Shown one piece after another: positions 466 to 57,077 of a stretch of DNA of 64,000 nucleotides (the stretch's first letter is position 1; every line of letters begins with the position of its first letter). The DNA is taken from positions 62,001-126,000 of the IMG/VR virus record IMGVR_UViG_3300014720_000001; one strand, 5' to 3'. A program made the position numbers and the translations under genes. The notes beneath the pieces were generated by a model. It had not been told where the DNA came from. It was given only the letters and a program-made list of their open reading frames with translations, and ran no database searches.

Positions 466-1839
466 TTACAGCAACTCACGAGCTTTTTGCTGCGCTTCGA
501 GATTACTCTTTATGCTCTCGGCGCGGATCTTTTCCATTTCAATCAGCTGCTTGATATCAAAATCGGCGAGTTGGCCGGCTTCTAACCGTTTTCGCAACAG
601 CGCCTGCATCGCGGCGCCCGAGCCGGTGAAGTTCGGCGCAATTTCGGCGATCTGGTTGTATGCGGAAGCTACCTCGTGCGGGTCGTAGCCGGAGATAACC
701 GGGTCGTTCAGAATAAGATCGTTCAGCACGCCACGCGATTTGATTTGCTGTAGTTTGTTTTCGTGCTCCGCGTCGGACATGCGCATAAACGCTTTTTGTT
801 TTTGCTTAGTCGGGTCATTGGCCTTGCCAGCTTCCGTGTCCATTTCTCCGGCTAGACCCGCTGGGCTCATCAGTTTGCCGAGATGGCCCATCGTACCGCT
901 ATAGGATGTCAGGGGCGGGGCCGAGTCTTGTTTTTTTTTAACCGCCGCCACCTTTAAAGCTAGCGGCGCGGTTTTGGGGTCGTGAAGGATTGAGCCGGTT
1001 ACGGGTGTCGGAGCCGCTTTCTTTTCGTCTGCCGGCGCCGCGAATGCCGCAAGCTTATTCTGTGCGTCGTTATGCAGTTCTACCGCTTTGATAACGTTCT
1101 CTACCAACGTCACAACGGGCAGATTACCGAAGTAATCCTGCTTTGTGGTGGCCTGTTTTGTGAAGTGCGGGTAAACCGCTGCAATTTTATTAAGGGTTGA
1201 CGCGCCCATGTCGCCGAGCCGTAAACCAACTTCGCGCACAGCGTCGTTAAACGACATGTGACCCGGAACGCGGAAATACTGGGCCAGCTCTTCCATTGCG
1301 CTTGCCGCTTTGTGGTGCGCAACCGTAGCCTGCCGGCGCGTCTCTTCCATAGCCTGCTTGGCGGCTTGTTTCTGGCTGTATGTACGCATGACCGCTGAGT
1401 GCTCATCGCGGGGCGGCGGGGTGTACGTCTTTTCTGGTAATACACTCTTGGCGGCGGCCGCTTTGTTTAATGCGGCGTTGCGGCGGGATATAAACCCAGT
1501 TGGCGACACCGCGTACTCGGTTGATATAACGCTGTTTTGCGTTAGCTCGGCCGACGTCTTTACATGTTTTGGATACAACGCGTTCATAACAACGTCTGCA
1601 TCTGCCAGCTGAAAGTCGGCAGCTTTCTCAAGCGTCGTCTCGCCTAGCTCGCGCTGCTTATTGGTGCGGCCAGTGTTATAGGCGTGCACCATAAGATTGA
1701 TGTGCCCGGCCGGGATATTGGCGTCCGACGCGCTTTTGATAATTGCAGCGTTAGGTGTCTCGCCGCCGTTAACCAACGTCGCAGCGCGCTCGATGGCGCT
1801 TAACAGCTTTTGCTCAGCTTTTTTACTTAGTGCCCGCAT
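466..1839 (-). CDS. Hypothetical Ala/Lys-rich protein, probable virion protein
   Basis: 457-aa ORF tightly packed with its neighbours; several K-x-A motifs; no recognisable catalytic motif. Confidence 0.7.
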   Translation of the reverse strand: MRALSKKAEQKLLSAIERAATLVNGGETPNAAIIKSASDANIPAGHINLMVHAYNTGRTNKQRELGETTLEKAADFQLADADVVMNALYPKHVKTSAELTQNSVISTEYAVSPTGFISRRNAALNKAAAAKSVLPEKTYTPPPRDEHSAVMRTYSQKQAAKQAMEETRRQATVAHHKAASAMEELAQYFRVPGHMSFNDAVREVGLRLGDMGASTLNKIAAVYPHFTKQATTKQDYFGNLPVVTLVENVIKAVELHNDAQNKLAAFAAPADEKKAAPTPVTGSILHDPKTAPLALKVAAVKKKQDSAPPLTSYSGTMGHLGKLMSPAGLAGEMDTEAGKANDPTKQKQKAFMRMSDAEHENKLQQIKSRGVLNDLILNDPVISGYDPHEVASAYNQIAEIAPNFTGSGAAMQALLRKRLEAGQLADFDIKQLIEMEKIRAESIKSNLEAQQKARELL

Positions 1840-5637: not shown

Positions 5638-7518
5638 TCACGGCTTCCACCCGCTTGTTGTGCCGATGACGCCAAACTGCTCGCCCTGCGCTAATGCCGG
5701 CACATAACTACTGCCAGCTGTATCGCTACTTAAGCCGCGCTGGACGCTATTCATCAGCCCTTTTTCCTGATAGGACCCCAACATTCGAGTCATCCAGTCG
5801 GGGTCGTTTGAAATGTTTGCCATACCCCGTACCATCTCCGGCTGAAACGGTGGCGGCTCTTTATGCGCCTGTACTGTTTTCACGCCGTATTTATTCAAGT
5901 TACTGAGCACGTTTTTACCGATCTTCGTGCCAATTGAGTAGTGCAGTACGGGTTTTTCTAGATAATGTCCGGAAAGCGAGCTAGGTGCGGCAGCTACACT
6001 TCCCTCGCGCGGAGTCCAGTTGCGCTCGATTGCGGAGTACGGCACAACGTCGTCAGGCACGTAATCGCCGTACTCGTCCGTCAGGCGCACGTGATTTACA
6101 AGTCCGCGCGCCAGTAGCTCGATGTTGCGCCGATGGGCTGTAATTCCGCTGTTACCCATTACCTGCCGCATGGCTTGCACAAAGTAGCGCCGGCCTTCGC
6201 CGATTCCTTTGTGCCTGACAATTTCTGAAGGATTTGGCATACCGTCTGATAGAACGTCGCCAGCTTCCAGCTCGTCGCCTTTTTTAATAGAAAGCGCGCG
6301 CTCGGTCGGGACGTAGTGGTCTTGTCCGTTAATTTGGACATAGTGCCCGCCTTGGGGAGCCGGGCGAATTTCTTGTACGCGGCCGTCGATTTGAGCGTGC
6401 GCGGCCCCGTCTGGATATTTTTTTGGCACCTGCACGAGCGCGTTGAGAGCTTTAAACCCCGAAATCGCCCCCGCGCCGCCGACACCGCCCGAGTGTTTCG
6501 AGCTGATCTGGCTTTGCGTGACGGGCTCGGACAGGGCTTGCGCCGCTGCGATGCCCACATAATCGCCAACAGGCGGTAAACGCCCTTTCTCTCGATAGCC
6601 GACGTCTCTTGCATAAACTCCGCCGTCTCCGGGACCGCCTACAATTGGGCTACGAACTAAAATATCTTTAGCGCCACTTTCTTTCAGGTCGCGCAGAATT
6701 TTGGGCGTTAATATCGTGTTTCGCTTGTACGGCCCCACCGCGCGCGCCAGTAACGCGCCTTCATTGTCGGGGTCATCTACGTCGGTCGGGTAGCCGCGTT
6801 CTTCTGCGGCCATACGGCGCTCTTCGTCGGTGTCGTCGTCATCGTCGGCTGTGACCAACAAACGGTGCGTCATCTGCGCCAACTGCTTGCCGTAGAAACC
6901 AGCGTCGGCCGTCGCGGTCTTCAGGTCGATCACGCCTTTACGGGTACCGAACGCGCCGGCAAAGTACTCCACCGGGCGTAAACCTTGGCTGTAACCGCGC
7001 AACACCGGAATTGGAATCGGTTCGCCGCGGTGATCTAGGTACTGCATGTCGGCGCCGAGAATTGAATTCAACTGAAACTTGTTGCCGACGCCAGACCCGG
7101 CGATTTGATGGACGAGGGGGTTATCCTGCCCTTCCGCTTCTTTGTAGACCTTGTCGAGAAGTTCTTGCTGGGCTGTTTGAGCAAGTTCAAGCAGTTTGAC
7201 GTTGCGTTGCTTTTCGTCGAGCCGTCTGTCGGCAAAAATGTCGCGCATCTGGTTTTGTACGCGCAACTGAACGTGCCGAGCCGCCAGCGTCGGTTTGATA
7301 TCTTTAAGCCCGAACGACAGGCCGTTAGTCGTGTACCCAGCATCACGGCCAATATCGTGCAACCGCTTCATAACCTCGCGATACTTTTCCGGGTGGGTTT
7401 TCGCCAGCTCGGTTGCGAGGCCCGACATTGTCTTCTTAGTTAAAACGCGGTCATAGTCGCGCATTTCTGGCGGCAGTGCTTCGTTTACCAGAAGTTGACC
7501 GAGCGTCGTTTTGAGCAT
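5638..7518 (-). CDS. rpoC: DNA-directed RNA polymerase beta' subunit, C-terminal half
   Basis: Begins TTLGQ (cf. E. coli TTVGR). Bridge helix GLRPVEYFAGAFGTRKGVIDLKTATADAGFYGKQL; trigger-loop region AAAQALSEPVTQSQISSKHSGG; RRNIELLARGL-like C-terminal motif. Confidence 0.92.
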   Translation of the reverse strand: MLKTTLGQLLVNEALPPEMRDYDRVLTKKTMSGLATELAKTHPEKYREVMKRLHDIGRDAGYTTNGLSFGLKDIKPTLAARHVQLRVQNQMRDIFADRRLDEKQRNVKLLELAQTAQQELLDKVYKEAEGQDNPLVHQIAGSGVGNKFQLNSILGADMQYLDHRGEPIPIPVLRGYSQGLRPVEYFAGAFGTRKGVIDLKTATADAGFYGKQLAQMTHRLLVTADDDDDTDEERRMAAEERGYPTDVDDPDNEGALLARAVGPYKRNTILTPKILRDLKESGAKDILVRSPIVGGPGDGGVYARDVGYREKGRLPPVGDYVGIAAAQALSEPVTQSQISSKHSGGVGGAGAISGFKALNALVQVPKKYPDGAAHAQIDGRVQEIRPAPQGGHYVQINGQDHYVPTERALSIKKGDELEAGDVLSDGMPNPSEIVRHKGIGEGRRYFVQAMRQVMGNSGITAHRRNIELLARGLVNHVRLTDEYGDYVPDDVVPYSAIERNWTPREGSVAAAPSSLSGHYLEKPVLHYSIGTKIGKNVLSNLNKYGVKTVQAHKEPPPFQPEMVRGMANISNDPDWMTRMLGSYQEKGLMNSVQRGLSSDTAGSSYVPALAQGEQFGVIGTTSGWKP

Positions 7519-8500: not shown

Positions 8501-11500
8501 TTACTTATTATCTTCCACAATATGCACCGGGGTGTCTACTTCAATTTCGCCGCGCCGGTACGCCTGCACGGCATCCTGCTTGCTACGAAACACCCGCGGT
8601 TTAGACTTTTTGTTAATCCGGCTCGACGCCAAGTATAGCCCGGTTTGGTAATCCTTGTTCGGCACGTAGTGCGCCCGGAACGTCGAGGCGGCAAACAAGT
8701 TCTTGCTCGGCAGCATCTTTTCGACGGCTTCTTGCGCGGCGTCGTCCGTGCTTGGCACGTGGTACTGCATGGCGTCGCCGTCGAAGTCGGCACCAAACCC
8801 CTTGGTGATTACGGGGTTTACTTCCATGACTTTGTTCTTAGTTAACTTGGGGTAGAACGCCATCATGCCGTAACGATGGAGTACCGGCGCGCGGTTAATC
8901 ACAATTGGGCGCGACGACATCTGCTTGTTTAACTCAGCCGCGGCTTCTTTGTTCTTGTCTTCTACCGCCTGCATAGCCTGCATGCGGGGAAGACCGCGGC
9001 GGACCAACCCGCGGACAACGAACGGTTTGTAAATATCCCACGCTTTCTCTTCCGGCAGCGCGACTTCGTCCATGTCCAAATCGGGATTCGGCGTGATCAC
9101 CGCGCGGCCGACGAGATCTACCGTCGAGCTGAGCAGCTTGCGCTGAACTGTGCCGTACTTGGGAGAGTTCCCAAACACGTGCCGCAAGAAACCCTTGACG
9201 TTGCGCTCGACGTTTTTGGGTTGTTGCGGTTCACCTAAGCCAGTCACCGCCTTCATCGAGTCGTACACACTCAGCCGCTCGTCGCCGTAATCTGCCAGCG
9301 CGCCCGATGCGTCTTTAAGCGTGTCGTTGGCGTCGAGCAATTCTTTGTACAAATAGTTTGCGTCAGCAACGAGCGGAAGCTTTTTGTTACCCATCGTGCT
9401 GACCGGGCGGAACATGGGTGGCAGGACCGGGACTTTACTAATCATCCAGTCCTTGGGGTGCACACCGGTTGTTTCGGCGCTCTTTAAAAAACCAAGCCGA
9501 CGCACTGCAGCATCGCGCAGGGTTTTACGCCCTGATTTAATATCTTCGCGCGCCTGCTCAATGGCTTTTGGTAAGTTAATGCGTTCCAGCGCGGCTTTGA
9601 TCGCCGTCGGTCCGGTTTTGTCGCCCAGCTGTTCACGCCCGGCCAGTATGCCTCGAAACTGCTTCTCCGTTAGGCCCAGCACGCGGCGGATCGGGTCTTC
9701 CATAACGGGGTTGGGCAGCGGCTCGTGCAGCGTGATCTTGCTCCACCGGTTACCGCCGTGACCACCTGTTAATGTTTCATCAAACAACCCACCAGCAATA
9801 GGTTTGAGGCGGCCCTTCCAGTCAACAGTTTCAGAACTCTTTAACTCGCGTGCGCCAGCCAGTTCATCGACGTCCTTGTCCGTCATGGCCATCAGATTTG
9901 AACGCGTACCTTTGCGCACAACGTTAATCCCAGACGCGCGAAGTTGATTTACAAACTTCTCGTAGACGTGCGGCACCTTGGGCAGCGGCGGTGTATACCC
10001 AGCCATGAACTGCGACCAGTATTCGGGATTGGCCTGCCCGCGCACCATTTTGGCGTCACGAATAACTTTGCCGGCCCCGTGCGACAGTAGCGCGCCGAGA
10101 TCGAGCATGCCGACGCGCTTAGCGCCCTCGCTGCCGCCCTTGGCCGGCGTGCCTTCAGCGGTATACGCGCCCATCGAGCGACCCTGCGCCTTCGACTCGC
10201 TGGTGTGGTGCAGTTTCATGAAAAACCGGCTGCCCGTCAGGACGCCGCCGATTTTGCGGCCGGTCTCTGGGTCGATAACGTCTTCGGTATCTGATAGCCC
10301 GTGCTTGGCCAGCTCTTTCTGCGCAAACTCAATCAAGTCGTTTTTGTTATCAAAGTCCTTGAGCTTGTACGGCGAACCGGTTTTCATCGCCACTTTACCC
10401 AGCGCAGCTTCGATCACCTGCGCGGGGTTAATGCGGCTGATTAGACCCAGCGGCGAGACAAGCACTTCAAACGGATTGCCGTCGCGGTCCTTGGGCATCT
10501 GGTCGTCCGGGACGATCTCTGCCACGACGCCCTTGTCGCCGAAACGCCCGGTGAGCTTATCGCCGACGTCCATGGGCGCTTGGTTTTTAACAACGACGCT
10601 CACGCCCTTTTTGGTGTGCATGACATCGGTTACAACCCCGGGCGCATGATGATCCCACGTGATCGTTTCGTTAGTGAAGCTGCCGGCACGCCCGCGATGC
10701 ACCTTGCCGTATACCGTGTCTTTTTTCTTTGCCACAAGCACGAGTGGATCGCCAAATTTAACCTCGGTACCTTTTTTAATCGCACCGTCGTCGTCAAACT
10801 TGTCGAGGTACTTTTTGTCGTACTCGGTCGGGAACAAACTCACGAACGCCTTCTTGCCAACGTGAGTGTTGTCGTCCCACTCGGCTTCGTGCTGATACAT
10901 GTGCTCAGACGTCAGCCGTTTGGATGCAGATTCAGAAATCACTACGGCGTCTTCGTAGTTTTTGCCGCGAAAAGGCAGATAAGCCGTGCGCAAGTTAAGT
11001 CCAAGAGCCGCGCTACCGTTTTGATCGGTAAAATTTGAGCGGGCTAACAACTGCCCCGGATTCACTACGTCGCCCGGTTTTACAAGCGGCGTCTGATGTA
11101 AGAACGTCTTACGGTTGTACGGCATCTCGTTGTACAGATCGATCGTCTTTTTGTTGCCGTCTTTGTCGCGCAGCACGATACCGTCCGGCGTAACATCAAC
11201 AACTTGCGCCCGCTCGGTGGCCCGCGTGGCGCCTAATTTCTCGCCCATTTCGTCTTCGTGCGACATGCTCTCGTCGTCAGCTTTGGCGGACTGCAGCAGC
11301 GGCGCCTCAGCGTTTACGAGCGGAAGCGCCTGCGTAAACATTCGACTACCCATGATCACGCGATGACCTTTGATCATGGACTTGATCGGCACCATGTTGG
11401 ACAGCGTCGAGAACGTTGTGTCCATGTTTGGCAGGCTGAACTGCGCTTCTTTTCGCGGCACGTACTTGAGCTTGCCGTTTACAAGCGCGGCTACGACAGG

Positions 11501-12919
11501 TAACCCGTTGTCTTCTTCGCCCGGAAACACGAGCGGGGTATCAGATAACTCTTGCGGCGTCTTGTACACCTTCTCGCCGGTTTTCATATCTACAACAGGC
11601 GTATAGACCTTGCCGTCCGCGCCTTTCATAGCGCCGCGGGCAAACCGCATGTCGACGCCCACTTTTCCAGACTCGGGCGTGCGGAGGTAGTCGATAAAGC
11701 CGAGATGGCTGGGTTGCACAGAACGCGACTCAGCGGGCACGGCGTCGAGCGAGCCGATGCCGCCCTCGCCCATGCGCGTTACGCGGGTCTGGTGGTCAAA
11801 GATCTCGGCCGGGTTGATCTCTTCTAAGCTCGACCCCAGCCCGCTGCCGATCAACGCCGCAGAAATAGCTTTGTCGAATACGCCGGACGGAATGTGGTCA
11901 ATCGACTTTTTAGCCGTGGCTTTCCAGAGCAGTTTATTTAGTGCTTGCCGATCTTTAGTAAACCGCTCAGCAATAAGGTCTTCCGGGCCGACAACTGACT
12001 GGTACACCATGTTGTCGCGGTCGTCGCTATCGGCCTCGCGGCGATTCACTGCGATTAATTTCTTAGTGATCGCCAGAATCGTCTCCGGCGTCATGTTCTT
12101 GTATTCAGACCCAAGCGTGCGGCGGGTAACTTCGGGGTCAAGTTCAGTCTTGGCAAACTCCGCGGCAATAGCCTGCGCTTTCGCAATCGGATCAGCGCCG
12201 GCAACCTGTTTATTCACCAGCCGGGCATAGATCTTGTCCATCGTGCCCGCGTCGCCCTTCTCCATGTTGACCGCGGTGATCTCGTTGCCCCACGCCGAGC
12301 GGATGTCCTGATCTGACACGCCCATCGACTTGAGCAGCGGCATGAGCGGAATCTGCGCCTGCCCAATGCTAATCTTGAACACGCCGGTTTTGGGGTCGAG
12401 GAAGTACCGATGCGAACGGCCTTTGCCCGGCAGCGTGTTTACGTGCGCTTCAATCTCGCCGTTGTCTTTCTCGCGGGTAAAAACGCCGGGGCGCAACCGC
12501 ATCTGGTGCGCAAGTGTGTACTCCACGCCCCCGTTTACGAACGTGCCGGAGTCGGTGAGATAGGGCACGTGCGCAATCGTGGCGCGCCGCTGGCCGACGG
12601 GCTGGCCGGTTTTGTTATCTGTAAGCGTCCACGTACCCTGCAGCCGCCGGGCAAGTGTCCCGCGGGAAAGGACAGCTTTCTTCTGATCTGCCCTTGTGAA
12701 ACGTTCGGGCCCCGTGTACCCGACGTCTTGAAGTTGCAGCGTATACAGGTCGTTCTGCAGCGGTTTAAGACCTTGCGCGCTGGTGAGCGCTTGGTTGAAG
12801 ATGTTGTCGCGCATCACACCAACGTCGCCGAACGAACGCATCGTCGGCGCAGCTGACTGCGCAGCTGACTGCGCAGACAACGACGGCGTCGTTTTAAGCG
12901 GTGGCAACTCGGGGGTCAT
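8501..12919 (-). CDS. rpoB: RNA polymerase beta subunit fused to the N-terminal half of beta'
   Basis: Beta motifs VPYLTDSGTFVNGGVEY, GDKLTGRFGDKGVV, KLHHTSESKAQGRS, GMLDLGALLSHGA. After about 9920 come beta' motifs GLFDETLTG, LLSSTVDLVGRAVI, NRAPVLHR and the catalytic GADFDGD (8774-8794). Confidence 0.93.
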   Translation of the reverse strand: MTPELPPLKTTPSLSAQSAAQSAAPTMRSFGDVGVMRDNIFNQALTSAQGLKPLQNDLYTLQLQDVGYTGPERFTRADQKKAVLSRGTLARRLQGTWTLTDNKTGQPVGQRRATIAHVPYLTDSGTFVNGGVEYTLAHQMRLRPGVFTREKDNGEIEAHVNTLPGKGRSHRYFLDPKTGVFKISIGQAQIPLMPLLKSMGVSDQDIRSAWGNEITAVNMEKGDAGTMDKIYARLVNKQVAGADPIAKAQAIAAEFAKTELDPEVTRRTLGSEYKNMTPETILAITKKLIAVNRREADSDDRDNMVYQSVVGPEDLIAERFTKDRQALNKLLWKATAKKSIDHIPSGVFDKAISAALIGSGLGSSLEEINPAEIFDHQTRVTRMGEGGIGSLDAVPAESRSVQPSHLGFIDYLRTPESGKVGVDMRFARGAMKGADGKVYTPVVDMKTGEKVYKTPQELSDTPLVFPGEEDNGLPVVAALVNGKLKYVPRKEAQFSLPNMDTTFSTLSNMVPIKSMIKGHRVIMGSRMFTQALPLVNAEAPLLQSAKADDESMSHEDEMGEKLGATRATERAQVVDVTPDGIVLRDKDGNKKTIDLYNEMPYNRKTFLHQTPLVKPGDVVNPGQLLARSNFTDQNGSAALGLNLRTAYLPFRGKNYEDAVVISESASKRLTSEHMYQHEAEWDDNTHVGKKAFVSLFPTEYDKKYLDKFDDDGAIKKGTEVKFGDPLVLVAKKKDTVYGKVHRGRAGSFTNETITWDHHAPGVVTDVMHTKKGVSVVVKNQAPMDVGDKLTGRFGDKGVVAEIVPDDQMPKDRDGNPFEVLVSPLGLISRINPAQVIEAALGKVAMKTGSPYKLKDFDNKNDLIEFAQKELAKHGLSDTEDVIDPETGRKIGGVLTGSRFFMKLHHTSESKAQGRSMGAYTAEGTPAKGGSEGAKRVGMLDLGALLSHGAGKVIRDAKMVRGQANPEYWSQFMAGYTPPLPKVPHVYEKFVNQLRASGINVVRKGTRSNLMAMTDKDVDELAGARELKSSETVDWKGRLKPIAGGLFDETLTGGHGGNRWSKITLHEPLPNPVMEDPIRRVLGLTEKQFRGILAGREQLGDKTGPTAIKAALERINLPKAIEQAREDIKSGRKTLRDAAVRRLGFLKSAETTGVHPKDWMISKVPVLPPMFRPVSTMGNKKLPLVADANYLYKELLDANDTLKDASGALADYGDERLSVYDSMKAVTGLGEPQQPKNVERNVKGFLRHVFGNSPKYGTVQRKLLSSTVDLVGRAVITPNPDLDMDEVALPEEKAWDIYKPFVVRGLVRRGLPRMQAMQAVEDKNKEAAAELNKQMSSRPIVINRAPVLHRYGMMAFYPKLTKNKVMEVNPVITKGFGADFDGDAMQYHVPSTDDAAQEAVEKMLPSKNLFAASTFRAHYVPNKDYQTGLYLASSRINKKSKPRVFRSKQDAVQAYRRGEIEVDTPVHIVEDNK

Positions 12920-17694: not shown

Positions 17695-18531
17695 TCACGT
17701 TTGAGGAACAAGTACATACGGGCGGCCATTGATCACAAGTGTACCGTTAATATTTAAACCAGCGTCTTTGGTAATAGGATATGCCGTGGTGCGCTTGCCG
17801 TATAACTTAATTATTTCAGCGACGTCACCGTCTTGCGGTTTTGTCACGTTTGGATCGTAATACGGCGCCATGAGGTTACCATTCGCCAAGTGCGGCAAGC
17901 CGAGCGCGTGGCCGAGTTCGTGGCAAATGACGGCCACGGCCATGTTGAAGCTCCAGTCCTCCGCCTCGTCGAACATCTGGTCGAGCTGGATATTCTCGGC
18001 AACGCCGCACGGTAACTCGCTCCACGCGAGTGTGCCGCCTTTGCTATCTAAACCGTTTTTCTTACCCGAACCTGACCGCGCGTAGATGTTGGCTTTTTTG
18101 TGTGTGTCCACGCGCAACGGGTCAATCGCACACACTTCGGCCCACTGCGAAAACGCGATGTCGTATGCCTCGGCCACCTGCGCGTTGGTTAAGCCGGGCA
18201 GGTGCATCTCGTGGTAATAGGCGATGTTTGGCATCGGCCATTTGCACGGGTCGCCGCCGGGGGCCGTGATGTTGAAGTCCGGCAAGCCGCAGCGCCGGCG
18301 ATTGATGCGGTGCGCGGTCTTCGGCCCGACGGTGCCGGTCGGATTCAGGCCATTAAACTCTTGAAACGCACGAACTGCTTTTTGCAGCTCGGCACCCTTG
18401 ATCTTTTTGACCTGCGCCAACGTCTTGTCGCCAAAATACCCCAGCGCGTGCAGGCGCCGGAGAATTTCGCTGACGGGCAGAACATGAGTATCAGCCGGTT
18501 GATTTGTTGGCTTCCGTGCCATCGTGCGCAT
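17695..18531 (-). CDS. Peptidoglycan-binding domain plus matrixin-like (M10) metallopeptidase; candidate endolysin
   Basis: PG_binding_1-like LQKAVRAFQEFNGLNPTGTVG; cysteine-switch-like RRCGLPD; HELGHALGLPH; Met-turn LMAP. Confidence 0.8.
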   Translation of the reverse strand: MRTMARKPTNQPADTHVLPVSEILRRLHALGYFGDKTLAQVKKIKGAELQKAVRAFQEFNGLNPTGTVGPKTAHRINRRRCGLPDFNITAPGGDPCKWPMPNIAYYHEMHLPGLTNAQVAEAYDIAFSQWAEVCAIDPLRVDTHKKANIYARSGSGKKNGLDSKGGTLAWSELPCGVAENIQLDQMFDEAEDWSFNMAVAVICHELGHALGLPHLANGNLMAPYYDPNVTKPQDGDVAEIIKLYGKRTTAYPITKDAGLNINGTLVINGRPYVLVPQT

Positions 18532-19383: not shown

Positions 19384-20394
19384 CTACCGCCCGAACAAAC
19401 TCGGGACGACGGCGTGCATCATGCCGCCCCACAAACCCAATTCTTGTAACTTATTTTGCCCTGCGGGCGTTAAGCCAGCCATGGCGGAGAGCGCTTTGCC
19501 GGCCACCGTCGCTGTAGCAAGACCCACGCCGGCAGACGCAATCCCGTTAATAACGTCCACGGGGCGGATAATCGGCGATCGCCGATTGGCGCTAATACCG
19601 GCCATAAGCCCCGTGGCCGCGGCGGCGTACTGGGGCGGCGTGTGATTCTGAAACCCGCGATACATACCCATGTTTACGTCCTGCCACGCGGCGCTATTGA
19701 ATTGCGGCACCGACACGGTCGGCGCAAATATCGGATTATTCGCGAACGACTTTTTTGTCATCTTCGCTTCGTACGGGTAAACAACAGGCGTTTTGTTGTG
19801 CGTCAGGAGTCCGCGCAACATGCTCGTACGAAGCGCGCGCGCATTGGCGTACGAGTTAATTCCGGCAACACCCACGCCCGACAGCGCACCCATTAATCCA
19901 AGCGTGCGCCGAAGTTTGCCGCGCTCCAAATAGCGCTCAGGAAAAAACTGTTCGGCTAGCGTCCCGGCGCCGTAGCCCAGCCCTCCCGCCAACAAACCGG
20001 TCATCAATCCGTTGGAAAGCGGCGTCGGCCCGCCAAGTAGTTTATTGCCCGTGTTCCAGACAGTCGGCAGTCCGGGGACAAGCGAGCCGGTTTTGATAAT
20101 AATTTCTTCGGTTACGTCAGGTTGCGCGGGACCGTACGTTACAACCGCCGCGCTGTACCCGGCAGCTTTCATCGCCGCGACGTAGGCGTCGCTGGCAGTT
20201 TTAGTCGTTTGCGCTGGCGCGTACAGCGTGACTAACCCAACCTCCGGTTCCCATGTCGCGACAGTCGTAGCCAGCAACGCATTGGCAGCCGCGACTTGTT
20301 CGTGAGCGACTTTGAGACGGACGGCGAGCGGAAAGAGCGCTGCGACACGCTCCGGCACTTTTTGCCACTCGTAGATAGTTGGCGCTGTAGTCAT
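19384..20394 (-). CDS. Glycine-zipper membrane protein with K-x-A motifs
   Basis: Start reassigned to MTTAPT; GLLAGGLGYGAG, GALSGVGVAG and GVGLATA segments. Confidence 0.7.
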   Translation of the reverse strand: MTTAPTIYEWQKVPERVAALFPLAVRLKVAHEQVAAANALLATTVATWEPEVGLVTLYAPAQTTKTASDAYVAAMKAAGYSAAVVTYGPAQPDVTEEIIIKTGSLVPGLPTVWNTGNKLLGGPTPLSNGLMTGLLAGGLGYGAGTLAEQFFPERYLERGKLRRTLGLMGALSGVGVAGINSYANARALRTSMLRGLLTHNKTPVVYPYEAKMTKKSFANNPIFAPTVSVPQFNSAAWQDVNMGMYRGFQNHTPPQYAAAATGLMAGISANRRSPIIRPVDVINGIASAGVGLATATVAGKALSAMAGLTPAGQNKLQELGLWGGMMHAVVPSLFGR

Positions 20395-20395
20395 G

Positions 20396-20668
20396 TTAAC
20401 GGGCGACACCCAGCATAAATTTTGCAAACAACGACAACCACGCCAGCACACCGCTGATAGCAAAAAAAACAATCACGCCGCTCAGGCTGACAACGCGCCC
20501 GAGCTTGTGAAACGGAATTTCCTTAAGCAGCCGCCACGCTTTGACGTAATCCACCACATTCGGCTGGTGCGGTGCGGCGGGAACAGGCGTCGGGGCGGGC
20601 TGGGGCGCGTCGGGCGTCTTTTTTTTCCGGATCCAGCCCGTCAATTTATCGAGCAGCGGTGTGGCCAT
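20396..20668 (-). CDS. Small membrane protein
   Basis: MATPLLDK start; C-terminal hydrophobic helix. Confidence 0.55.
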   Translation of the reverse strand: MATPLLDKLTGWIRKKKTPDAPQPAPTPVPAAPHQPNVVDYVKAWRLLKEIPFHKLGRVVSLSGVIVFFAISGVLAWLSLFAKFMLGVAR

Positions 20669-22094
20669 TGGTCTTCCCCCAATTTTGAATCGTGTCAAAG
20701 ATATCGTTGCCGTACAACTGCGTCGCCTTATCGAACATGTTCATCTGCGGTAGCGTGCCTGTCGCGGCCGCTTGCGCCATCTGATAGCGATACTGCGGAT
20801 CAAGTGTTGTGCGATAGATATGGGCTTTGTTGCGCGCAGCCAAAATGAAATCGCCGCGCTGCTTGGCCTTCAGCAAGTGGTCGGTCACGTTCGCGAACAC
20901 CGGTTTGTTGTGGTCATAAACAAACGGCGTGCGGAAATCGAGCAGATTGCGAAACTGCTGCGCATACACGCTGTTGGTCGCCGCCTTCACATGCGAACCA
21001 ATCACCTTAGCGGGCGCATGAAACCGAAACTTGGTCGGCGCATGGGTGATGCCTTTGTATTTAGGCTTCGGGTCGTCCACGTGCCAGTCTTGCGGTGATT
21101 GCGAGATTAATCGCCGCAGGATTTCGTGCTTGCGGTCGTATTCGCGGCGGTCTGAGTGGGTTTTTGCCGCACGCAGTTCGTCGAGAACGCCGGGCTTTTT
21201 GGACTTGGGCTCTTCTTCGGCGCCCTTCTCTATTTTTTCGATTTTTTCGTAGTACAGCGGGTCTTTTTGCAGATGATCCTTGGCAATTTCTTCGGCAACT
21301 TGGTCGTTTCTTGTGTGCTCGTGCTCATGTTTAGCTCCTTCAGCTAGCGCGGGGGCAGAAAAATCCCGATCGGGTAAATTATCAGCTTTTCCACCCGCTA
21401 ACAGGTCGTTTTGTCCCGAGCGGGAAAATTCGGCGGTGGCGGCTTTCAGTGACCCCCTGCTGATGGGGTTACTAAACCTATGCTCTTCCGTCGTTTCGGC
21501 AGAGGTTTCGTTACACTTCGACGTGCCGTTATCGAGCAAAACGCCTTTACGTCTGGCGGCAACGGTGATGTGAAACGGATGGTCATCATTGGGGAGCGCC
21601 GACAGGCCATAGCTCTTGCGGAGCGCCGAAAGTGCCGGGCTGCTGACCTGCACAGCCCAGACTTTGCTCACGCCATCGACGTTTTTGACGTCGATTTCTT
21701 TCAGCCCGCCCAGCGTGTAGCCGAACATATGGCCGCGCTCGCTGATCTTGTCAGCGCCGATAGATGCAACCTCGTCAGCCGTCATGACCGATATATGCGC
21801 ATTTACCAGATCGCCCTTAACGTTTGGAACGTTAAACACGCCGGCCGTCGGTAATTCCGCGCCGGGAGCAGTCAGCGCGTCAAACACGCCGCGGACCAGC
21901 GCGTTCGGTACAGATAACAAAAGCCAGCCAGATTTGGCGAGATACAGCCGGCCGGCAAGCGGATAATTCGTGGCCGCCTGTTTGTTGCCGCTGCAGTAAA
22001 GCCAGCCGAGCGCGTTACCGGCGGCGTAGGCGGGATGCTCGCGAAAGTACTGCGGGTCCCAAGCGAGCGGATCGAGTGCTGAGAGGCTGTCCAT
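20646..22094 (-). CDS. Multi-module protein: 2H phosphoesterase-like domain, DUF5661-like module and further modules
   Basis: Paired HxS/HxT motifs AHISVM and FHITVA; EGAKHEHEHT...AEEIAKDHL...YYEKI module; K-x-A motifs between modules. Confidence 0.65.
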   Translation of the reverse strand: MDSLSALDPLAWDPQYFREHPAYAAGNALGWLYCSGNKQAATNYPLAGRLYLAKSGWLLLSVPNALVRGVFDALTAPGAELPTAGVFNVPNVKGDLVNAHISVMTADEVASIGADKISERGHMFGYTLGGLKEIDVKNVDGVSKVWAVQVSSPALSALRKSYGLSALPNDDHPFHITVAARRKGVLLDNGTSKCNETSAETTEEHRFSNPISRGSLKAATAEFSRSGQNDLLAGGKADNLPDRDFSAPALAEGAKHEHEHTRNDQVAEEIAKDHLQKDPLYYEKIEKIEKGAEEEPKSKKPGVLDELRAAKTHSDRREYDRKHEILRRLISQSPQDWHVDDPKPKYKGITHAPTKFRFHAPAKVIGSHVKAATNSVYAQQFRNLLDFRTPFVYDHNKPVFANVTDHLLKAKQRGDFILAARNKAHIYRTTLDPQYRYQMAQAAATGTLPQMNMFDKATQLYGNDIFDTIQNWGKTNGHTAAR

Positions 22095-22108
22095 AGCGCG
22101 CTTTCAAA

Positions 22109-22180
22109 CTGCCTGAGTAGGACTCGAACCTACAACCCCAGCATTAACAGTGCCGTGCACTACCATTGTGCTATCAGGCA
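22109..22180 (-). tRNA. trnN: tRNA-Asn(GTT)
   Basis: TGCCTGA/TCAGGCA acceptor stem; anticodon arm CGGCA-CT GTT AA-TGCTG; GTTCGAGTC T-loop; no encoded CCA. Confidence 0.95.
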
Positions 22181-22317
22181 AGGTATGTCACGGGGTCGCG
22201 CTAATTGTTGGTGTCGTCATACCTCCGACCGCGTGATGTGCCACCGCCGCATATGCTGACACAAACAGCAAGAGGCAAAATACTGCGGAAGCGCCCCACG
22301 CGGCTACGCTCAATTGT

Positions 22318-23559: not shown

Positions 23560-24591
23560 TCAAAGAATCTTGGCGGCAATTAAGCACCCGCGGGCAACAG
23601 CATGCAACGGATCTTTGGCGTGACGAACTTCTTTCACAGGAAGTGGGAAGCCGTTCTCTTCCAGCTTCTTGGTAAACATGTCCACGAAGCCCTTGGCCCG
23701 TGTCGTGCCGCCGGCCACAGATATCAAAATCGGCTCTTTGAACTTGGGCAGCGCTTTGTGCCCGGCCAGTGCGTGCGCCAGCATCTTGGTCGTGTAGTCA
23801 ATCAGGCGCTCGTAGTACACGCTCACGGCGGCCAGAATCGTGTTGTCGTTCTTCTCGCCGATGACAAACGCGCCGTGCTCCTTTTCCGCCTGCACTACAG
23901 AGTCAGGCTCGTTCGTAGCCACTGCGGTCATGCGATCGACCCAGTCGCCCGACTTGGTCGTTGAGAACATCACGGTGGGCTCGCCGTTGAGCATCACGCA
24001 GACGTTCACCATACCGGCGCCCCACGACAGGCCGATGCCGGTGTAGTCGTCGTGCTCCAGCTCCGAGTAGCACAGCGCTTCAGCCTCGTTAATGGCCCGA
24101 GCGGCGTAGCCCTGTTCGGCCAGCACCGTGCGCACCACATCTTCGTGGTACGCCACGTCGAAGTCGTCGTCTTCGTGGTCGACGGGCTGCGCCGGAACGC
24201 AAAAGATCAGCTTCTCGTGGGGCTGGCTGGCGGTGCCGACCACTTCCTTGAGAATGAACGCCAGCACGCGCTTGGCTTCTTTTTCCTTGGGGCTGACAAC
24301 GCCGCGGTACATCGGCCGGCGCGCAGAGTCATTGCGCTCGACGGCTTTCTCAATGGCGTCTTGGCCGAGAATGATGAAGCTCCCGTCGGCGTCCTTGACG
24401 AAGACTTTGCCCTGCAGGCCCTTCTCAATCATCTTTGTAGCCACGGGCGTCGTCGGTTTGATGACGTAGAACGCGTCGCGGAAATCCTTGTATTCCACGT
24501 TGCCGACCGCGTGCGGATCGGTCGTGGAGTTGGCGGCCGCGGCCTGCGCGAGCACGATAAACGAGGTACCGACGTCGAGTCCCTTGGCCAT
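23560..24591 (-). CDS. Actin-like ATPase (MreB/MamK/ParM superfamily)
   Basis: Phosphate-1 GLDVGT, connect-1 INEAEA, phosphate-2 LSWGAGMVNV, adenosine VAGGTT, connect-2 AVARG. Confidence 0.85.
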   Translation of the reverse strand: MAKGLDVGTSFIVLAQAAAANSTTDPHAVGNVEYKDFRDAFYVIKPTTPVATKMIEKGLQGKVFVKDADGSFIILGQDAIEKAVERNDSARRPMYRGVVSPKEKEAKRVLAFILKEVVGTASQPHEKLIFCVPAQPVDHEDDDFDVAYHEDVVRTVLAEQGYAARAINEAEALCYSELEHDDYTGIGLSWGAGMVNVCVMLNGEPTVMFSTTKSGDWVDRMTAVATNEPDSVVQAEKEHGAFVIGEKNDNTILAAVSVYYERLIDYTTKMLAHALAGHKALPKFKEPILISVAGGTTRAKGFVDMFTKKLEENGFPLPVKEVRHAKDPLHAVARGCLIAAKIL

Positions 24592-52316: not shown

Positions 52317-52390
52317 TAACCCGGGTGGGAGTCGAACCCACAACAAGTAGATCCTAAATCTACCGCCTCTGCCAATTGGGCTACCGAGTT
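52317..52390 (-). tRNA. trnL: tRNA-Leu(TAG), short variable loop
   Basis: AACTCGG/CCGGGTT acceptor stem; GTAGA-TT TAG GA-TCTAC; 5-nt variable loop. Confidence 0.9.
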
Positions 52391-52510
52391 GAACGTGGTT
52401 TATTCCGGTTGCACCACCACAAGGTTTTTTATCACACCGGACCTTTGCCTGCTGTATATCGTAGGGAGCGCAGCAGGCCGCGGATTCCCTTGAACGTGCC
52501 CTTGCGGGCA

Positions 52511-52583
52511 TGACCCCACGGGGATTCGAACCCCGGTAAACGGAACGAAAATCCGTTGTCCTAGACCTCTAGACGATGGGGCC
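52511..52583 (-). tRNA. trnE: tRNA-Glu(TTC)
   Basis: GGCCCCA/TGGGGTC acceptor stem; ACGGA-TT TTC GT-TCCGT. Confidence 0.95.
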
Positions 52584-52590
52584 GCCTCAG

Positions 52591-52902
52591 TTATTTAGCA
52601 GCTTCTTGGCTCCAAAACAACTGGGCGCGTTCAATGGCGGCCAGCATGCGCTTTCGCCCGACCGGGTTGGCCGAATGAATGCGCACCTCGATTGGCGACA
52701 GGCTACCCTTGTAGGCCGCTTCCTCGATGAACTTTGCGACGTCGTAACCCGTGCCGTTCTCTTCTGGGCCAAGATCGTGGTCCAGCGAAATCAGCGTGAT
52801 ACCGCCCACACGCAAAAGCCGAATGGCCGTTTCTGCTGTTTTGACGCAGCAGTCAAAGTCAGCCGGCTTGGGTCGCTCATCATCGAGCCAGAGTTTAACC
52901 AT
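52591..52902 (-). CDS. Cyclic-phosphate-processing receiver-like domain protein
   Basis: LWLDDERP...ISLDHDLG...TGYDVAKFI...IHSANPVG. Confidence 0.75.
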   Translation of the reverse strand: MVKLWLDDERPKPADFDCCVKTAETAIRLLRVGGITLISLDHDLGPEENGTGYDVAKFIEEAAYKGSLSPIEVRIHSANPVGRKRMLAAIERAQLFWSQEAAK

Positions 52903-53035
52903 AGTTAGCGCATTCCTTCTTTTCAAGCGTCCGCTCGGTCTTCCAAAACAAACGTTTTCCGAACTTTTTCATGTGCTTGTTCCAGCCCATGATCTTTGGT
53001 CGCACGTGCAGCAGTCCGCGCTTCTTCGTGGTCAT
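52895..53035 (-). CDS. Small basic protein
   Basis: 46 aa from MTTKKRG; AAGGAG SD. Confidence 0.5.
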   Translation of the reverse strand: MTTKKRGLLHVRPKIMGWNKHMKKFGKRLFWKTERTLEKKECANYG

Positions 53036-53060
53036 GTTGCTCCTTTGATAACAAAACCAA

Positions 53061-53133
<73 letters not shown>

Positions 53134-53198
53134 TCGCGTGGGTGGGGCGCCAAAGGCTTGGGCTACCTCCAGCGCCCCACCGTCAGCGAGTCTACGCT

Positions 53199-53549
53199 TC
53201 AGCGGTAGCGCTTGCACGCATACCACCGGCCATCCCTGCCACGCGCGACCCCTTGGTCTACGACCGCTCTGCCGCTATTGCTGTAGCAACAGTTGCCCAG
53301 CGCCTCGTCAGGCGAACGGCCCATGCCAACACCTTCCAGCCCTGAGTTACCGCCGTGGTGACCCATGCTGCAGCGGCTGGCCTGCAGCTCGGCTACGCCC
53401 TGTGCCGTGGCCGTAGATCCGCTGTAGGCGTACCCAGAATGAGTAGGCGTCGAGACCATTGGTGTCGTGTAGTAGCGACGACGTGGGGCAGCATGCGCAA
53501 CGCTGGCCAGCATCAAAACTGCAACGACACACGTGGAAAAACGGAACAT
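53199..53549 (-). CDS. Secreted minimal CAP/SCP-like protein
   Basis: Signal peptide; MGH...EGVG...C...GVA...WYAC pattern. Confidence 0.5.
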   Translation of the reverse strand: MFRFSTCVVAVLMLASVAHAAPRRRYYTTPMVSTPTHSGYAYSGSTATAQGVAELQASRCSMGHHGGNSGLEGVGMGRSPDEALGNCCYSNSGRAVVDQGVARGRDGRWYACKRYR

Positions 53550-53616
53550 AACGATCCTCCGTGACCCCGCTGCTGGTGTGCGCAGCGTGAAAAGAAACTA
53601 GCCCCACACCGGGCAG

Positions 53617-53690
53617 TAGGCGCAAAGGGACTCGAACCCCTAACCCCCTGCGTGTAAAGCAGGTGCTCTGACCAATTGAGCTATGCGCCT
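53617..53690 (-). tRNA. trnV: tRNA-Val(TAC)
   Basis: AGGCGCA/TGCGCCT acceptor stem; CCTGC-TT TAC AC-GCAGG. Confidence 0.95.
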
Positions 53691-53695
53691 AGGTT

Positions 53696-54081
53696 TTATT
53701 TGTACTTGCCGCGCCACTTGTCGAAGCGCAGCCTGTACCAATTCCACCTGTCGTACACCCGCAACCGCTGCCGGCGGAACCAGCGGCGGAACCGCAACCC
53801 CGGCGTGTTCAGGCCGTTCTCGTTGAGGTACTTCCTGTACGACCACTGAACAGCCTCGTCTGACCCGGCGTCGGTAACCGCGATGTCACACGCATCGCAG
53901 CGCAGGCAGGGCACGCCGTATACCGGCACCTGATGCACTTTGCCGTCAATGCGCATGTCGTACACGTCTTTAAACGTATACGCACGAAACGGCTCGCCAC
54001 ACTGATAACAACAAATCGGCCTGTATACGCAAGCCGGATTTTTTAACAGATTAGGCGACAGAATATTGTTGTCGGTCAACA
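53696..54081 (-). CDS. YgiT/MqsA-type zinc-finger protein (start uncertain)
   Basis: CYQCGE...VPCLRCDAC; Arg-rich C-terminus. Confidence 0.5.
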
Positions 54082-54102
54082 GAAACTCCTTTCTACTGCG
54101 AC

Positions 54103-54175: not shown

Positions 54176-54185
54176 CCGATGCTTT

Positions 54186-54789: not shown

Positions 54790-54826
54790 TTCCTCCTTGA
54801 AAGATGACAATTAAACAATCGACCAC

Positions 54827-57069: not shown

Positions 57070-57077
57070 TTTGGTTC

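What the first reader, a model, noticed from the sequence alone, without database searches (positions are those of the whole stretch)
20646..22094. 2H phosphoesterase domain embedded in an apparent virion polyprotein
Seen: paired HxS/HxT motifs (AHISVM at about 21785-21802; FHITVA at about 21558-21575) in a roughly 150-aa domain bounded by KQA and KAA, followed by a DUF5661-like module. Known: 2H phosphoesterases include the anti-CBASS enzyme Acb1 and RNA 2',3'-cyclic phosphodiesterases. Inference: a nucleotide-signal-degrading or RNA-repair enzyme might be pre-packaged and delivered with the genome.
Basis: partly seen in the sequence, partly recalled or inferred. Interest (0 to 1): 0.6.

Follow-up and report, generated by a model that had tools for sequence, protein, structure and literature searches.

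The report
Jumbo-phage 2H phosphoesterase cargo polyprotein
A 482-residue protein of an uncultured 205-kb phage carries an intact 2H phosphoesterase domain in a string of swappable modules separated by a short K-x-A-A motif, and that motif is concentrated in the phage's head-assembly genes, so the enzyme is probably cut out by the head protease and delivered with the DNA, although this has not been shown directly.

Summary
ORF 20646-22094 (-) encodes 482 aa with invariant H100-I-S and H175-I-T. It matches Pfam 2H-SAK (37.8 bits, cut-off 27) and DUF5661. The isolated domain folds with pLDDT 91.5, and 20 of its 21 best PDB matches are annotated 2H enzymes (Z 3.7-6.8); the next matches score Z 2.8 or less.

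The window lies in a 204,621-bp phage genome with terminal repeats. More than 400 metagenomic homologues share a constant frame: leader, 2H, DUF5661, C-terminal helical module. Optional inserts include two kinds of NUDIX, a Cys-rich unit and others. Nearly every module border reads K-x-A-A.

That motif is about 10 times denser in the head-assembly block (p 2e-16). The block holds a candidate protease, a scaffold-like protein and the capsid protein, and the sites there are conserved. DUF5661 also forms part of a head maturation protease in the cultured Vibrio phage VPs20.

Best reading: a head-packaged cargo polyprotein processed by the prohead protease, releasing a 2H enzyme that acts on cyclic or 2'-5' nucleotides or on RNA ends. 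Packaging, cleavage and substrate are all inferred. No specific kinship to Acb1 was found, and the genome has no RNA ligase partner. This is a new variant of the known polyvalent-protein theme.

The parts
20646..22094 (-). Whole ORF (482 aa plus stop): modular 2H / DUF5661 polyprotein, P0001
   Evidence: more than 413 homologues at E<=1e-3, many on contigs of about 200 kb
21972..22094 (-). N-terminal leader, residues 1-41, ending N-K38-Q-A-A; candidate propeptide or capsid-targeting sequence
   Evidence: The motif sits at this border in 112 of 113 polyprotein homologues. pLDDT is below 50 over residues 28-44. Standalone homologues have non-conserved leaders of about 10-45 aa (a few none) that end in K-x-A-[AS] in 41 of 96 cases, against 1.8% by chance.
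21540..21968 (-). 2H phosphoesterase domain (Pfam 2H-SAK), residues 43-185
   Evidence: Pfam. AF2 domain model pLDDT 91.5, pTM 0.84. VIA-align: 20 of the top 21 of 48,161 chains are annotated 2H enzymes, Z 3.7-6.8. Foldseek finds the same families in PDB and BFVD.
21789..21797 (-). First catalytic motif, H100-I-S102
   Evidence: His invariant in A1 and A2; lies at the start of a beta strand in the model
21564..21572 (-). Second catalytic motif, H175-I-T177
   Evidence: His invariant, Thr at least 90% conserved; lies within a beta strand in the model
21435..21446 (-). Border motif K217-A-A-T in the disordered linker after the 2H domain (consensus S-R-G-E-L-K-A-A)
   Evidence: Present within 50 aa of the second His in 109 of 113 homologues. 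pLDDT is below 50 over residues 182-228. This is the insertion point of the optional modules.
21216..21377 (-). DUF5661 module, residues about 240-293: three helices with the core motif G-x3-E-x-E-H-T ... E-I-A-x-D-H-L-x-E-x-P-x-Y-Y
   Evidence: Pfam. hhalign against the head maturation protease gp14 of Vibrio phage VPs20 gives probability 94.8%, E 5e-8. Alignment A4 has 12 invariant positions across six phages.
20988..21197 (-). Optional module, residues 300-369 (two helices plus three strands); absent from some homologues and attached directly to 2H in some short ones
   Evidence: Alignment A1; P0130, P0135 and P0174; secondary structure
20976..20987 (-). Border motif K370-A-A-T before the C-terminal module
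20649..20975 (-). Constant C-terminal helical module, residues 374-482 (three long helices); function unknown, possibly a capsid or scaffold tether
   Evidence: pLDDT 75-81. Only generic helical-bundle matches, Z 5.8 or less. Conserved in all full-length homologues.
22108..22181 (-). tRNA-Asn(GTT), 14 nt upstream of the start codon; its position is conserved in related phage genomes
466..1839 (-). 457-aa protein of the head-assembly block with 9 K-x-A-A motifs (1.5 expected), most of them conserved in 21 homologues, plus a hypervariable low-complexity insert; predicted substrate of the same protease
   Evidence: The rest of the block lies just outside the window, at genome 55.8-62 kb: candidate protease at genome 60038-61495, scaffold-like protein at 58651-59994, MCP at 56610-57551.

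Best explanation
P0001 is a modular cargo polyprotein, of the phage 'polyvalent protein' type, from an uncultured jumbo-phage lineage of about 205 kb. Its order is: a 38-41-aa leader, an active 2H phosphoesterase (Pfam 2H-SAK family), DUF5661, a small optional module, and a C-terminal three-helix module. Relatives insert further enzymes after the 2H domain (two kinds of NUDIX, others). The modules are separated by K-x-A-A, which I propose is the recognition site of the phage's prohead maturation protease. On this reading the precursor is taken into the prohead, with DUF5661 and/or the C-terminal helices as the tether. It is then cut at K-x-A-A along with the scaffold-like head proteins, and the freed 2H enzyme stays in the capsid and enters the cell with the DNA. 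There it would hydrolyse cyclic-phosphate, 2'-5' or 3'-5' cyclic-oligonucleotide linkages. The most likely targets are host immune nucleotide signals; the alternative is RNA with 2',3'-cyclic-phosphate ends. Shown: the ORF, the 2H fold and catalytic motifs, the modular architecture, the motif's conservation and its enrichment in the head block, and the presence of DUF5661 in a head maturation protease. Inferred: the identity of the protease, the cleavage, the packaging, the ejection and the substrate.
For: 2H domain. Pfam 2H-SAK scores 37.8 bits against a cut-off of 27. Both His are invariant in 114 sequences. The domain model has pLDDT 91.5. Of the 21 best matches among 48,161 PDB chains, 20 are annotated 2H enzymes (Acb1 Z 6.8, drCPDase 6.2, Usb1 6.0, LigT 5.9, poxvirus cGAMP PDE 5.9...), and the next rows are unrelated at Z 2.8 or less.

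Modularity. Homologues carry NUDIX, Cys-rich, helical and unknown inserts; the NUDIX, Cys-rich and helical ones end in K-x-A-[AS], while one unidentified ~230-aa insert lacks the closing motif. The motif stands at the leader border in 112 of 113 homologues and at the 2H C-border in 109 of 113. In diverged standalone homologues it stands there in 41 of 96 and 32 of 96, against 1.8% and 6.4% by chance. Two of the three sites in P0001 lie in linkers with pLDDT below 50. Codons at the motif vary, so selection acts on the peptide and not on the DNA.

Link to head assembly. K-x-A-A occurs 27 times in 3,096 aa of the block at genome 55.8-63.9 kb, against 51 times in 60,668 aa elsewhere (odds ratio 10.5, p 2e-16). 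The sites are conserved: 28-29 of 29 sequences at four sites of the scaffold-like protein, 27 of 27 at residue 25 of the 141-aa protein, and 29 of 29 at residue 247 of the candidate protease. Five head-block proteins and P0001 carry the motif at residues 25-38, like short propeptides. The block contains an MCP (language-model features 0.97-0.98 to MCP clusters; 88-99% conserved). It also contains a 485-aa protein with invariant His and Ser whose nearest named clusters are the S78/S77 prohead proteases, at a score of only 0.89.

DUF5661. It lies in gp14 of Vibrio phage VPs20, which is DUF2213 plus DUF5661 and matches PHROG 530 'head maturation protease' at E 3e-64, two genes upstream of the MCP. 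It also lies in a 2,039-aa InPase + DUF5661 + LigT-2H protein of virus Rctr197k.

Precedents. In SPN3US, gp245 cuts head and ejection proteins at A-x-E, removes N-terminal propeptides of 20-24 aa or longer, and cuts itself (PMC10052503). 2H domains in phage polyvalent proteins have been predicted to be capsid-delivered degraders of nucleotide signals (PMC5512222). No RNA ligase was detected in the genome.
Against: The gene lies about 20 kb from the head block, in a conserved neighbourhood of non-structural genes: Volactin, PhoH, ferritin-like, dCMP deaminase, RNAP and an M10 peptidase. Standalone 2H-SAK homologues also sit among auxiliary genes and not structural ones. The protease assignment is weak: no Pfam, PHROG-function or PDB match, and hhalign against T4 gp21 and VPs20 gp14 gave nothing. 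No proteomic, transcript-timing or cleavage data exist. K-x-A-A could instead be a helical-linker habit of this lineage. The capsid protein itself has no K-x-A-A. The Pfam family name points to RNA-repair proteins.
Confidence: 0.5

Rival explanations
1. A cytoplasmic enzyme that is not packaged. On this reading the protein is an ordinary multidomain protein made during infection, K-x-A-A is only a flexible or helical linker signature, and the 2H domain heals 2',3'-cyclic-phosphate RNA ends (for example tRNAs cut by host anticodon nucleases) or trims nucleotide pools.
For: The best Pfam match is the 2H domain of 'Swiss Army Knife' RNA-repair proteins. A conserved tRNA-Asn gene lies immediately upstream, and the genome is tRNA-rich. 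The neighbourhood is metabolic or replicative and conserved. Standalone homologues lie among auxiliary genes.
Against: No Rnl1, Rnl2 or RtcB ligase was found in the 204.6-kb genome (the Rnl1 search had no positive control). The published survey found that polyvalent-type 2H domains never associate with RNA ligases (PMC5512222). A linker habit does not explain why the motif is 10 times denser and positionally conserved in the head block, nor why it recurs at residue 25-38 of six proteins. DUF5661 is found in a head maturation protease.
Confidence: 0.3
2. A specific Acb1 orthologue: an anti-CBASS nuclease that cleaves 3'3'-cGAMP and related cyclic di- and trinucleotides.
For: Acb1 (7t27) is the top structural match, at Z 6.8 with 107 residues aligned and rmsd 3.5 Å. 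The domain is of similar small size. It is a phage protein.
Against: The Acb1 score is tied within 1 Z unit with CPDase, Usb1, LigT, the poxvirus PDE, MHV ns2 and YjcG. hhalign of the family profile against T4 Acb1 gives probability 2.7% and pairs the second His motif with Acb1's first. In BFVD, Acb1 entries rank 19th or lower (E 0.07 or worse), behind 2H-SAK and LigT-like entries. Pfam assigns the domain to 2H-SAK.
Confidence: 0.1
3. Self-processing polyvalent protein: cleavage at K-x-A-A is carried out by a peptidase activity within the protein itself, for example the E/H/D-rich DUF5661, as proposed for the MPTase domains of classical polyvalent proteins.
For: DUF5661 has invariant E-x-E-H and D-H residues that look like a metal site. 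It accompanies a protease domain in VPs20 gp14. Iyer et al. proposed embedded peptidases as the processing solution (PMC5512222).
Against: No peptidase family matches any part of P0001. The first His of the apparent HEHEH is not conserved. DUF5661 is only about 55 residues of three helices. The same motif occurs in many head proteins that lack DUF5661.
Confidence: 0.07

Closest known systems
2H domains of phage polyvalent proteins (Iyer, Burroughs, Anand, de Souza, Aravind 2017, PMC5512222)
   Same: A phage-encoded 2H domain strung together with other enzymatic modules. Domain content varies between relatives. No RNA-ligase partner. Predicted delivery with the DNA and action on nucleotide signals or RNA. 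A related giant protein in virus Rctr197k combines InPase, DUF5661 and a LigT-type 2H domain.
   Different: Much smaller (about 390-760 aa). No embedded MPTase or other peptidase, and no MuF or portal fusion. The modules are separated by a fixed K-x-A-A motif that is shared with head-assembly proteins, which points to cleavage in trans by the prohead protease. The gene is not adjacent to structural genes.
Pfam PF22547 2H-SAK (2H domain of 'Swiss Army Knife' RNA-repair proteins)
   Same: Scores above the gathering threshold (37.8 and 40.5 bits against 27). A BFVD entry with this name is among the best structural matches.
   Different: The match covers profile positions 33-120 only. No RNA-repair partners (ligase, kinase, HAD phosphatase) were detected nearby, and no ligase anywhere in the genome.
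Acb1 (T4 gp57B; phage FBB1 Acb1, PDB 7t26/7t27)
   Same: A small phage 2H enzyme and the top structural neighbour (Z 6.8). A plausible shared logic of destroying immune nucleotide signals.
   Different: No sequence-profile relationship. Acb1 is a free-standing cytoplasmic protein, not known to be part of a polyprotein. The structural score is tied with many other 2H subfamilies.
Prohead-protease-processed internal and ejection proteins (T4 IPs and Alt; phiKZ/SPN3US E proteins, PMC10052503)
   Same: Short N-terminal leader ending in a protease motif. The same motif recurs in scaffold-like proteins and after the protease's own catalytic domain. An enzyme cargo delivered with the DNA.
   Different: The motif here is K-x-A-A, not L/I-x-E or A-x-E. 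The cleavage is unproven. Here the motif separates several cargo modules within one precursor.
Head maturation protease of Chaseviridae (Vibrio phage VPs20 gp14, PHROG 530: DUF2213 + DUF5661)
   Same: Shares the DUF5661 module (hhalign probability 94.8%).
   Different: P0001 has no DUF2213 domain. Its enzyme is a 2H phosphoesterase, not a protease.

Membership tests
2H phosphoesterase superfamily | Two H-x-[ST]-x motifs about 70-90 residues apart | tested here: met
   H100-I-S and H175-I-T. Both His are invariant in 50 full-length and 114 domain homologues.
2H phosphoesterase superfamily | Bilobed alpha+beta fold shared with LigT, CPDase, Usb1 and Acb1 | tested here: met
   Model pLDDT 91.5, pTM 0.84. 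20 of the top 21 of 48,161 PDB representatives are annotated 2H enzymes, Z 3.7-6.8, with 92-127 residues aligned; unrelated chains start at Z 2.8.
2H phosphoesterase superfamily | The two His side chains converge on one active-site cleft | tested here: inconclusive
   The tools do not return model coordinates, so the His-His distance could not be measured. Both motifs lie on beta strands inside the region that aligns with solved 2H enzymes (model range 15-146).
2H phosphoesterase superfamily | Phosphodiesterase activity on cyclic or 2'-5' phosphodiester substrates | not testable with these tools
   Needs an enzyme assay
Pfam PF22547 2H-SAK | HMM score above the curated gathering threshold | tested here: met
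   37.8 bits and 40.5 bits against a cut-off of 27
SAK-type RNA-repair system | Association with an RNA ligase and end-healing partners | tested here: not met
   No PF09414 or PF01139 match in the complete genome. The PF09511 search was blank but had no positive control. The neighbours are Volactin, small ORFs and a Gly-zipper protein.
Acb1 anti-CBASS nucleases | Sequence-profile relationship to T4 Acb1 (gp57B) | tested here: not met
   hhalign probability 2.7% with an out-of-register alignment
Acb1 anti-CBASS nucleases | Closer in structure to Acb1 than to other 2H subfamilies | tested here: inconclusive
   Acb1 scores Z 6.8 but ties within 1 Z with six other subfamilies. In BFVD, Acb1 entries rank 19th or lower.
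Phage polyvalent proteins (Iyer et al. 2017) | Several unrelated effector domains in one polypeptide, with domain content shuffled between relatives | tested here: met
   2H plus DUF5661, with or without NUDIX (two types), a Cys-rich unit and other modules
Phage polyvalent proteins (Iyer et al. 2017) | Embedded processing peptidase (MPTase or papain-like) or a fusion to MuF or portal | tested here: not met
   No such domain in Pfam, PHROG or NCBIfam scans of P0001 or six homologues
Prohead-protease-processed head-internal proteins | Carries the same short cleavage-type motif as the scaffold and head proteins of its own phage, including one near the N-terminus | tested here: met
   K-x-A-A at residues 38, 217 and 370. 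The motif is 10.5 times enriched in the head block (p 2e-16), conserved there, and stands at residue 25-35 in five head-block proteins. That the motif is a cleavage site is an inference.
Prohead-protease-processed head-internal proteins | Present in virions in processed form | not testable with these tools
   There is no cultured relative. tblastn against 50,697 phage records finds only the DUF5661 segment.

The most novel reading that the evidence does not exclude
This jumbo-phage lineage uses a simple linker code: K-x-A-A read by its prohead protease, plus a DUF5661 / helical tether. The code lets it load exchangeable enzyme cassettes (2H, NUDIX and others) into the capsid as one precursor and release them as separate counter-defence enzymes on injection. 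That would be a trans-processed, plug-and-play form of the polyvalent-protein strategy. It would also assign DUF5661 a first function as a prohead-interior targeting module.
Probability: 0.3. Interest if true: 0.7.

Novelty: new variant of a known kind. Interest (0 to 1): 0.5.

Why it matters
If the reading is right, the locus gives a compact and testable example of how large phages pre-load enzymes against nucleotide-based immunity (CBASS, Thoeris, type III CRISPR) or RNA-targeting defence. It predicts a defined cleavage motif and a candidate capsid-targeting tag, DUF5661, which currently has no known function and occurs in head maturation proteases and giant polyvalent proteins. The natural variation in cargo across more than 400 relatives (2H alone, 2H + NUDIX, and other combinations) would be a ready-made catalogue of delivered effectors. 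If the reading is wrong, the protein is still a well-supported new subgroup of the 2H-SAK family with an unusual modular build.

Tried and rejected
- P0001 had no hits in PHROGs or NCBIfam, and only chance-level hits (E 0.6-0.8) in the PDB sequence search.
- Literature searches for 'Swiss Army Knife' with 2H, '2H-SAK', 'DUF5661' and 'BCSR5' found nothing usable. The Burroughs & Aravind 2016 paper is not held, so what 'SAK' means rests on Iyer et al. 2021 and on memory.
It is a fused RNAP beta/beta'.
- The candidate prohead protease (genome 60038-61495) could not be confirmed. There was no Pfam hit, only a PHROG of unknown function, and no PDB profile hit. hhalign against T4 gp21 and VPs20 gp14 was insignificant. 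The word search returned only close unnamed relatives.
- Complex prediction of the protease N-domain (1-250) with the P0001 leader (1-70) gave no answer (score 0.10, mark 0.32). This is not evidence either way.
- hhalign of P0001 against the protease family was insignificant (probability 2.5%).
- The C-terminal module has only generic helical-bundle matches.
- K-x-A-A as a DNA-level recombination joint was rejected, because the codons vary.
- A Sec signal peptide was rejected by inspection: the leader is acidic and has no hydrophobic core.
- An acylphosphatase-like reading of one insert (P0037, P0045) was not confirmed by Pfam.
- Standalone 2H-SAK contexts gave no structural neighbours.
Full report
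**Setting.** The window is bases 62001-126000 of a 204,621-bp IMG/VR virus record with direct terminal repeats, rated complete. Almost all genes are on the minus strand. The window encodes:
- a split multisubunit RNA polymerase (8501-12919 and 5638-7518);
- a Volactin-family actin homologue;
- PhoH, a ferritin-like protein, a dCMP deaminase and a methyltransferase;
- an M10 peptidase with a peptidoglycan-binding domain;
- seven tRNAs.

No cultured phage is close. tblastn of the target protein against 50,697 phage records finds only one 80-residue stretch.

**The observation.** ORF 20646-22094 (-) is open for 482 codons. K38-Q-A-A-T and K217-A-A-T flank the domain, and a third K370-A-A-T lies further on. 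Pfam gives 2H-SAK (PF22547, residues 95-182, E 2.7e-9, 37.8 bits against a cut-off of 27) and DUF5661 (PF18905, residues 253-290, 29.5 bits against 27).

**The 2H domain.**
- Folding the whole protein gave a poor multidomain model (pLDDT 67).
- Residues 40-195 folded with 114 homologues gave pLDDT 91.5 and pTM 0.84.
- Against 48,161 PDB representatives, 20 of the 21 best chains are annotated 2H enzymes: Acb1 Z 6.8, Deinococcus CPDase 6.2, Usb1 6.0, LigT 5.9, penguinpox cGAMP PDE 5.9, a Burkholderia-phage PDE 5.8, MHV ns2 5.7, YjcG, CNPase, AKAP18, ASCC1 and rotavirus VP3. The one exception is a mitoribosomal chain. Unrelated folds begin at Z 2.8.
- Foldseek lists the same families.
- Both His are invariant in all alignments. 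The fold and an intact catalytic dyad are therefore well supported.
- I could not measure the His-His distance because no coordinates are returned.
- Subfamily placement is open, since the Z scores tie. hhalign against T4 Acb1 gives 2.7% and is out of register. In BFVD the best matches are uncharacterised giant-virus proteins and a 'Swiss Army Knife 2H' phage entry, with Acb1 entries only from rank 19. This is a 2H-SAK-type domain, not an Acb1 orthologue.

**The family is a string of modules.**
- More than 413 homologues exist, many on contigs of about 200 kb.
- They share a constant frame: leader, 2H, DUF5661 and a C-terminal helical module.
- Between 2H and DUF5661 they carry optional inserts: two kinds of NUDIX with an intact NUDIX box, a C-x-C-rich unit, a helical unit and unidentified units. 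A 70-residue module before the C-terminus is also optional.
- The named inserts (NUDIX, Cys-rich, helical) end in K-x-A-[AS]; one unidentified ~230-aa insert lacks a closing motif. The motif stands at the leader border in 112 of 113 sequences and after the 2H domain in 109 of 113.
- 246 standalone 2H-SAK proteins (170-270 aa, 50-60% identical) mostly have unrelated leaders of about 10-45 aa. These end in K-x-A-[AS] in 41 of 96 cases, against 1.8% by chance. 32 of 96 carry the motif after the domain, against 6.4% by chance.
- In P0001 two of the three motifs lie in linkers with pLDDT below 50.
- The codons at the motif differ from site to site, so it is the peptide that is conserved and not a DNA joint.

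**The motif belongs to the head-assembly genes.**
- Across the whole proteome, K-x-A-A (or K-A-A) is barely above expectation overall (74 observed against about 62 expected). It is concentrated in a few proteins.
- After correcting the gene calls, the block at genome 55.8-63.9 kb holds 27 motifs in 3,096 aa, against 51 in 60,668 aa elsewhere (odds ratio 10.5, p 2e-16).
- The block contains, in order:
  - a 457-aa protein with nine motifs (window 466-1839);
  - a Gly-zipper protein;
  - a 485-aa protein with invariant His103 and Ser164, whose nearest named language-model clusters are the S78 and S77 prohead proteases (score 0.89, a lead only);
  - an acidic low-complexity scaffold-like protein with six motifs;
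  - a 141-aa protein;
  - a 192-aa protein;
  - a 313-aa protein that is 88-99% conserved and scores 0.97-0.98 to major-capsid clusters.
- A tail sheath follows.
- In 21-29 related genomes the motif sites are conserved far better than their surroundings. One site sits right after the presumed catalytic domain of the candidate protease (29 of 29 sequences).
- Five of these proteins, and P0001, carry the motif at residue 25-38.
- This is the pattern described for SPN3US, phiKZ and T4. There the prohead protease removes short or long N-terminal propeptides at a fixed tripeptide, shreds the scaffold and trims itself (PMC10052503).

**DUF5661 points the same way.** In the cultured Vibrio phage VPs20, gp14 is DUF2213 + DUF5661. 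It matches PHROG 530 'head maturation protease' over its whole length (E 3e-64) and lies two genes before the capsid protein. Homology of that DUF5661 to the one in P0001 is supported (hhalign 94.8%). The module also occurs:
- in a 2,039-aa InPase + DUF5661 + 3x DUF7178 + LigT-2H protein of virus Rctr197k, a classical polyvalent architecture;
- in a 609-aa protein between the terminase genes of cyanophage S-SRM01;
- as a 70-aa protein in Caulobacter phage Cr30.

Its core has 12 invariant positions, including E-x-E-H and D-H. What it does is unknown.

**What argues against packaging.**
- The gene is about 20 kb from the head block, in a conserved neighbourhood: Volactin, small ORFs, tRNA-Asn, the polyprotein, a small ORF, a Gly-zipper protein and an M10 peptidase.
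- Standalone relatives also sit among auxiliary genes.
- The protease identity is unconfirmed.
- The complex prediction gave no answer.

**Function.**
- The genome has no detectable Rnl2-type or RtcB ligase. The Rnl1 search was blank but uncontrolled. There is no second 2H gene and no NUDIX gene.
- Iyer et al. noted that the 2H domains of polyvalent proteins and their solo relatives never accompany RNA ligases. They proposed that these domains degrade defence-related nucleotides or act as Usb1-like RNases.
- The recurrent pairing with NUDIX in relatives fits action on nucleotide-derived molecules.
- I therefore rank destruction of nucleotide signals slightly above RNA-end processing, but neither is tested.

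**Verdict.** It is best read as a small, trans-processed variant of the phage polyvalent-protein theme, carrying a 2H-SAK-type phosphoesterase. The fold and the modular architecture are solid. The cleavage, the packaging and the substrate are inferences with clear experimental tests.

Noticed in passing
window 8501-12919 (-) and 5638-7518 (-): Multisubunit RNA polymerase in two genes. The 1,472-aa protein fuses beta (Rpb2 domains 3 and 6) to the N-terminal part of beta' (Rpb1 domains 1 and 2). The 626-aa protein carries Rpb1 domain 5. In a relative the first gene is 1,812 aa (L062).
   Followed up: partly
window 23560-24591 (-): Full-length match to Pfam Volactin (E 1.5e-62), an actin-family protein. 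It is conserved at the same position in related jumbo-phage genomes (L061, L062).
   Followed up: no
window 22108-22181 (-): tRNA-Asn(GTT) ends 14 nt before the polyprotein start codon. The tRNA is also upstream of the polyprotein in L061 and L062, with a 69-aa ORF between them. Six more tRNAs cluster at 52317-54899.
   Followed up: partly
window 19384-20472 (-): A 362-aa protein (the true start is probably an internal Met) rich in Gly-zipper or membrane-like segments, with K-T-A-S and K-A-A near its N-terminus. It lies downstream of the polyprotein, as in relatives. It may be another head-internal or ejection protein.
   Followed up: no
window 17695-18531 (-): Peptidoglycan-binding domain fused to a matrixin (M10) zinc peptidase. 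This is an unusual endolysin-like or virion-associated cell-wall peptidase, conserved in relatives.
   Followed up: no
window 466-1839 (-) and its homologues L017-L058: The K-x-A-A-rich 457-aa head-block protein has a hypervariable insert (0 to about 190 aa). In some relatives the insert is low-complexity and Gly- or Pro-rich; in others it is charged and repetitive.
   Followed up: partly
homologues P0009, P0015, P0017, P0029, P0102 and others: A Cys-rich insert of about 30 residues (C-x-C-x3-C-x-C-P-x2-C-x-C-K-x2-G-x-C), metallothionein-like, lies between 2H and DUF5661 in many relatives. It is absent from the window's protein.
   Followed up: no
window 59258-62365 (-) and 62365-63486 (-): Two adjacent proteins with Laminin_G_3 / ConA-like lectin repeats that match baseplate-wedge and virion structural PHROGs. 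They are probably receptor-binding or baseplate proteins.
   Followed up: no
genome 10005-11249 (+), locus L002: A 414-aa plus-strand protein with 5 K-x-A-A motifs (0.9 expected) and a weak DUF6582 hit, far from the head block. It may be another protease substrate.
   Followed up: no
L014 / L015 (contigs carrying standalone 2H-SAK P0203): The standalone 2H-SAK gene sits beside a CsrA homologue and an 807-aa InPase + GNAT protein in a contig of about 105 kb. L011 carries a ribosomal protein S12-like gene and a LigD_N + DNA ligase fusion.
   Followed up: no
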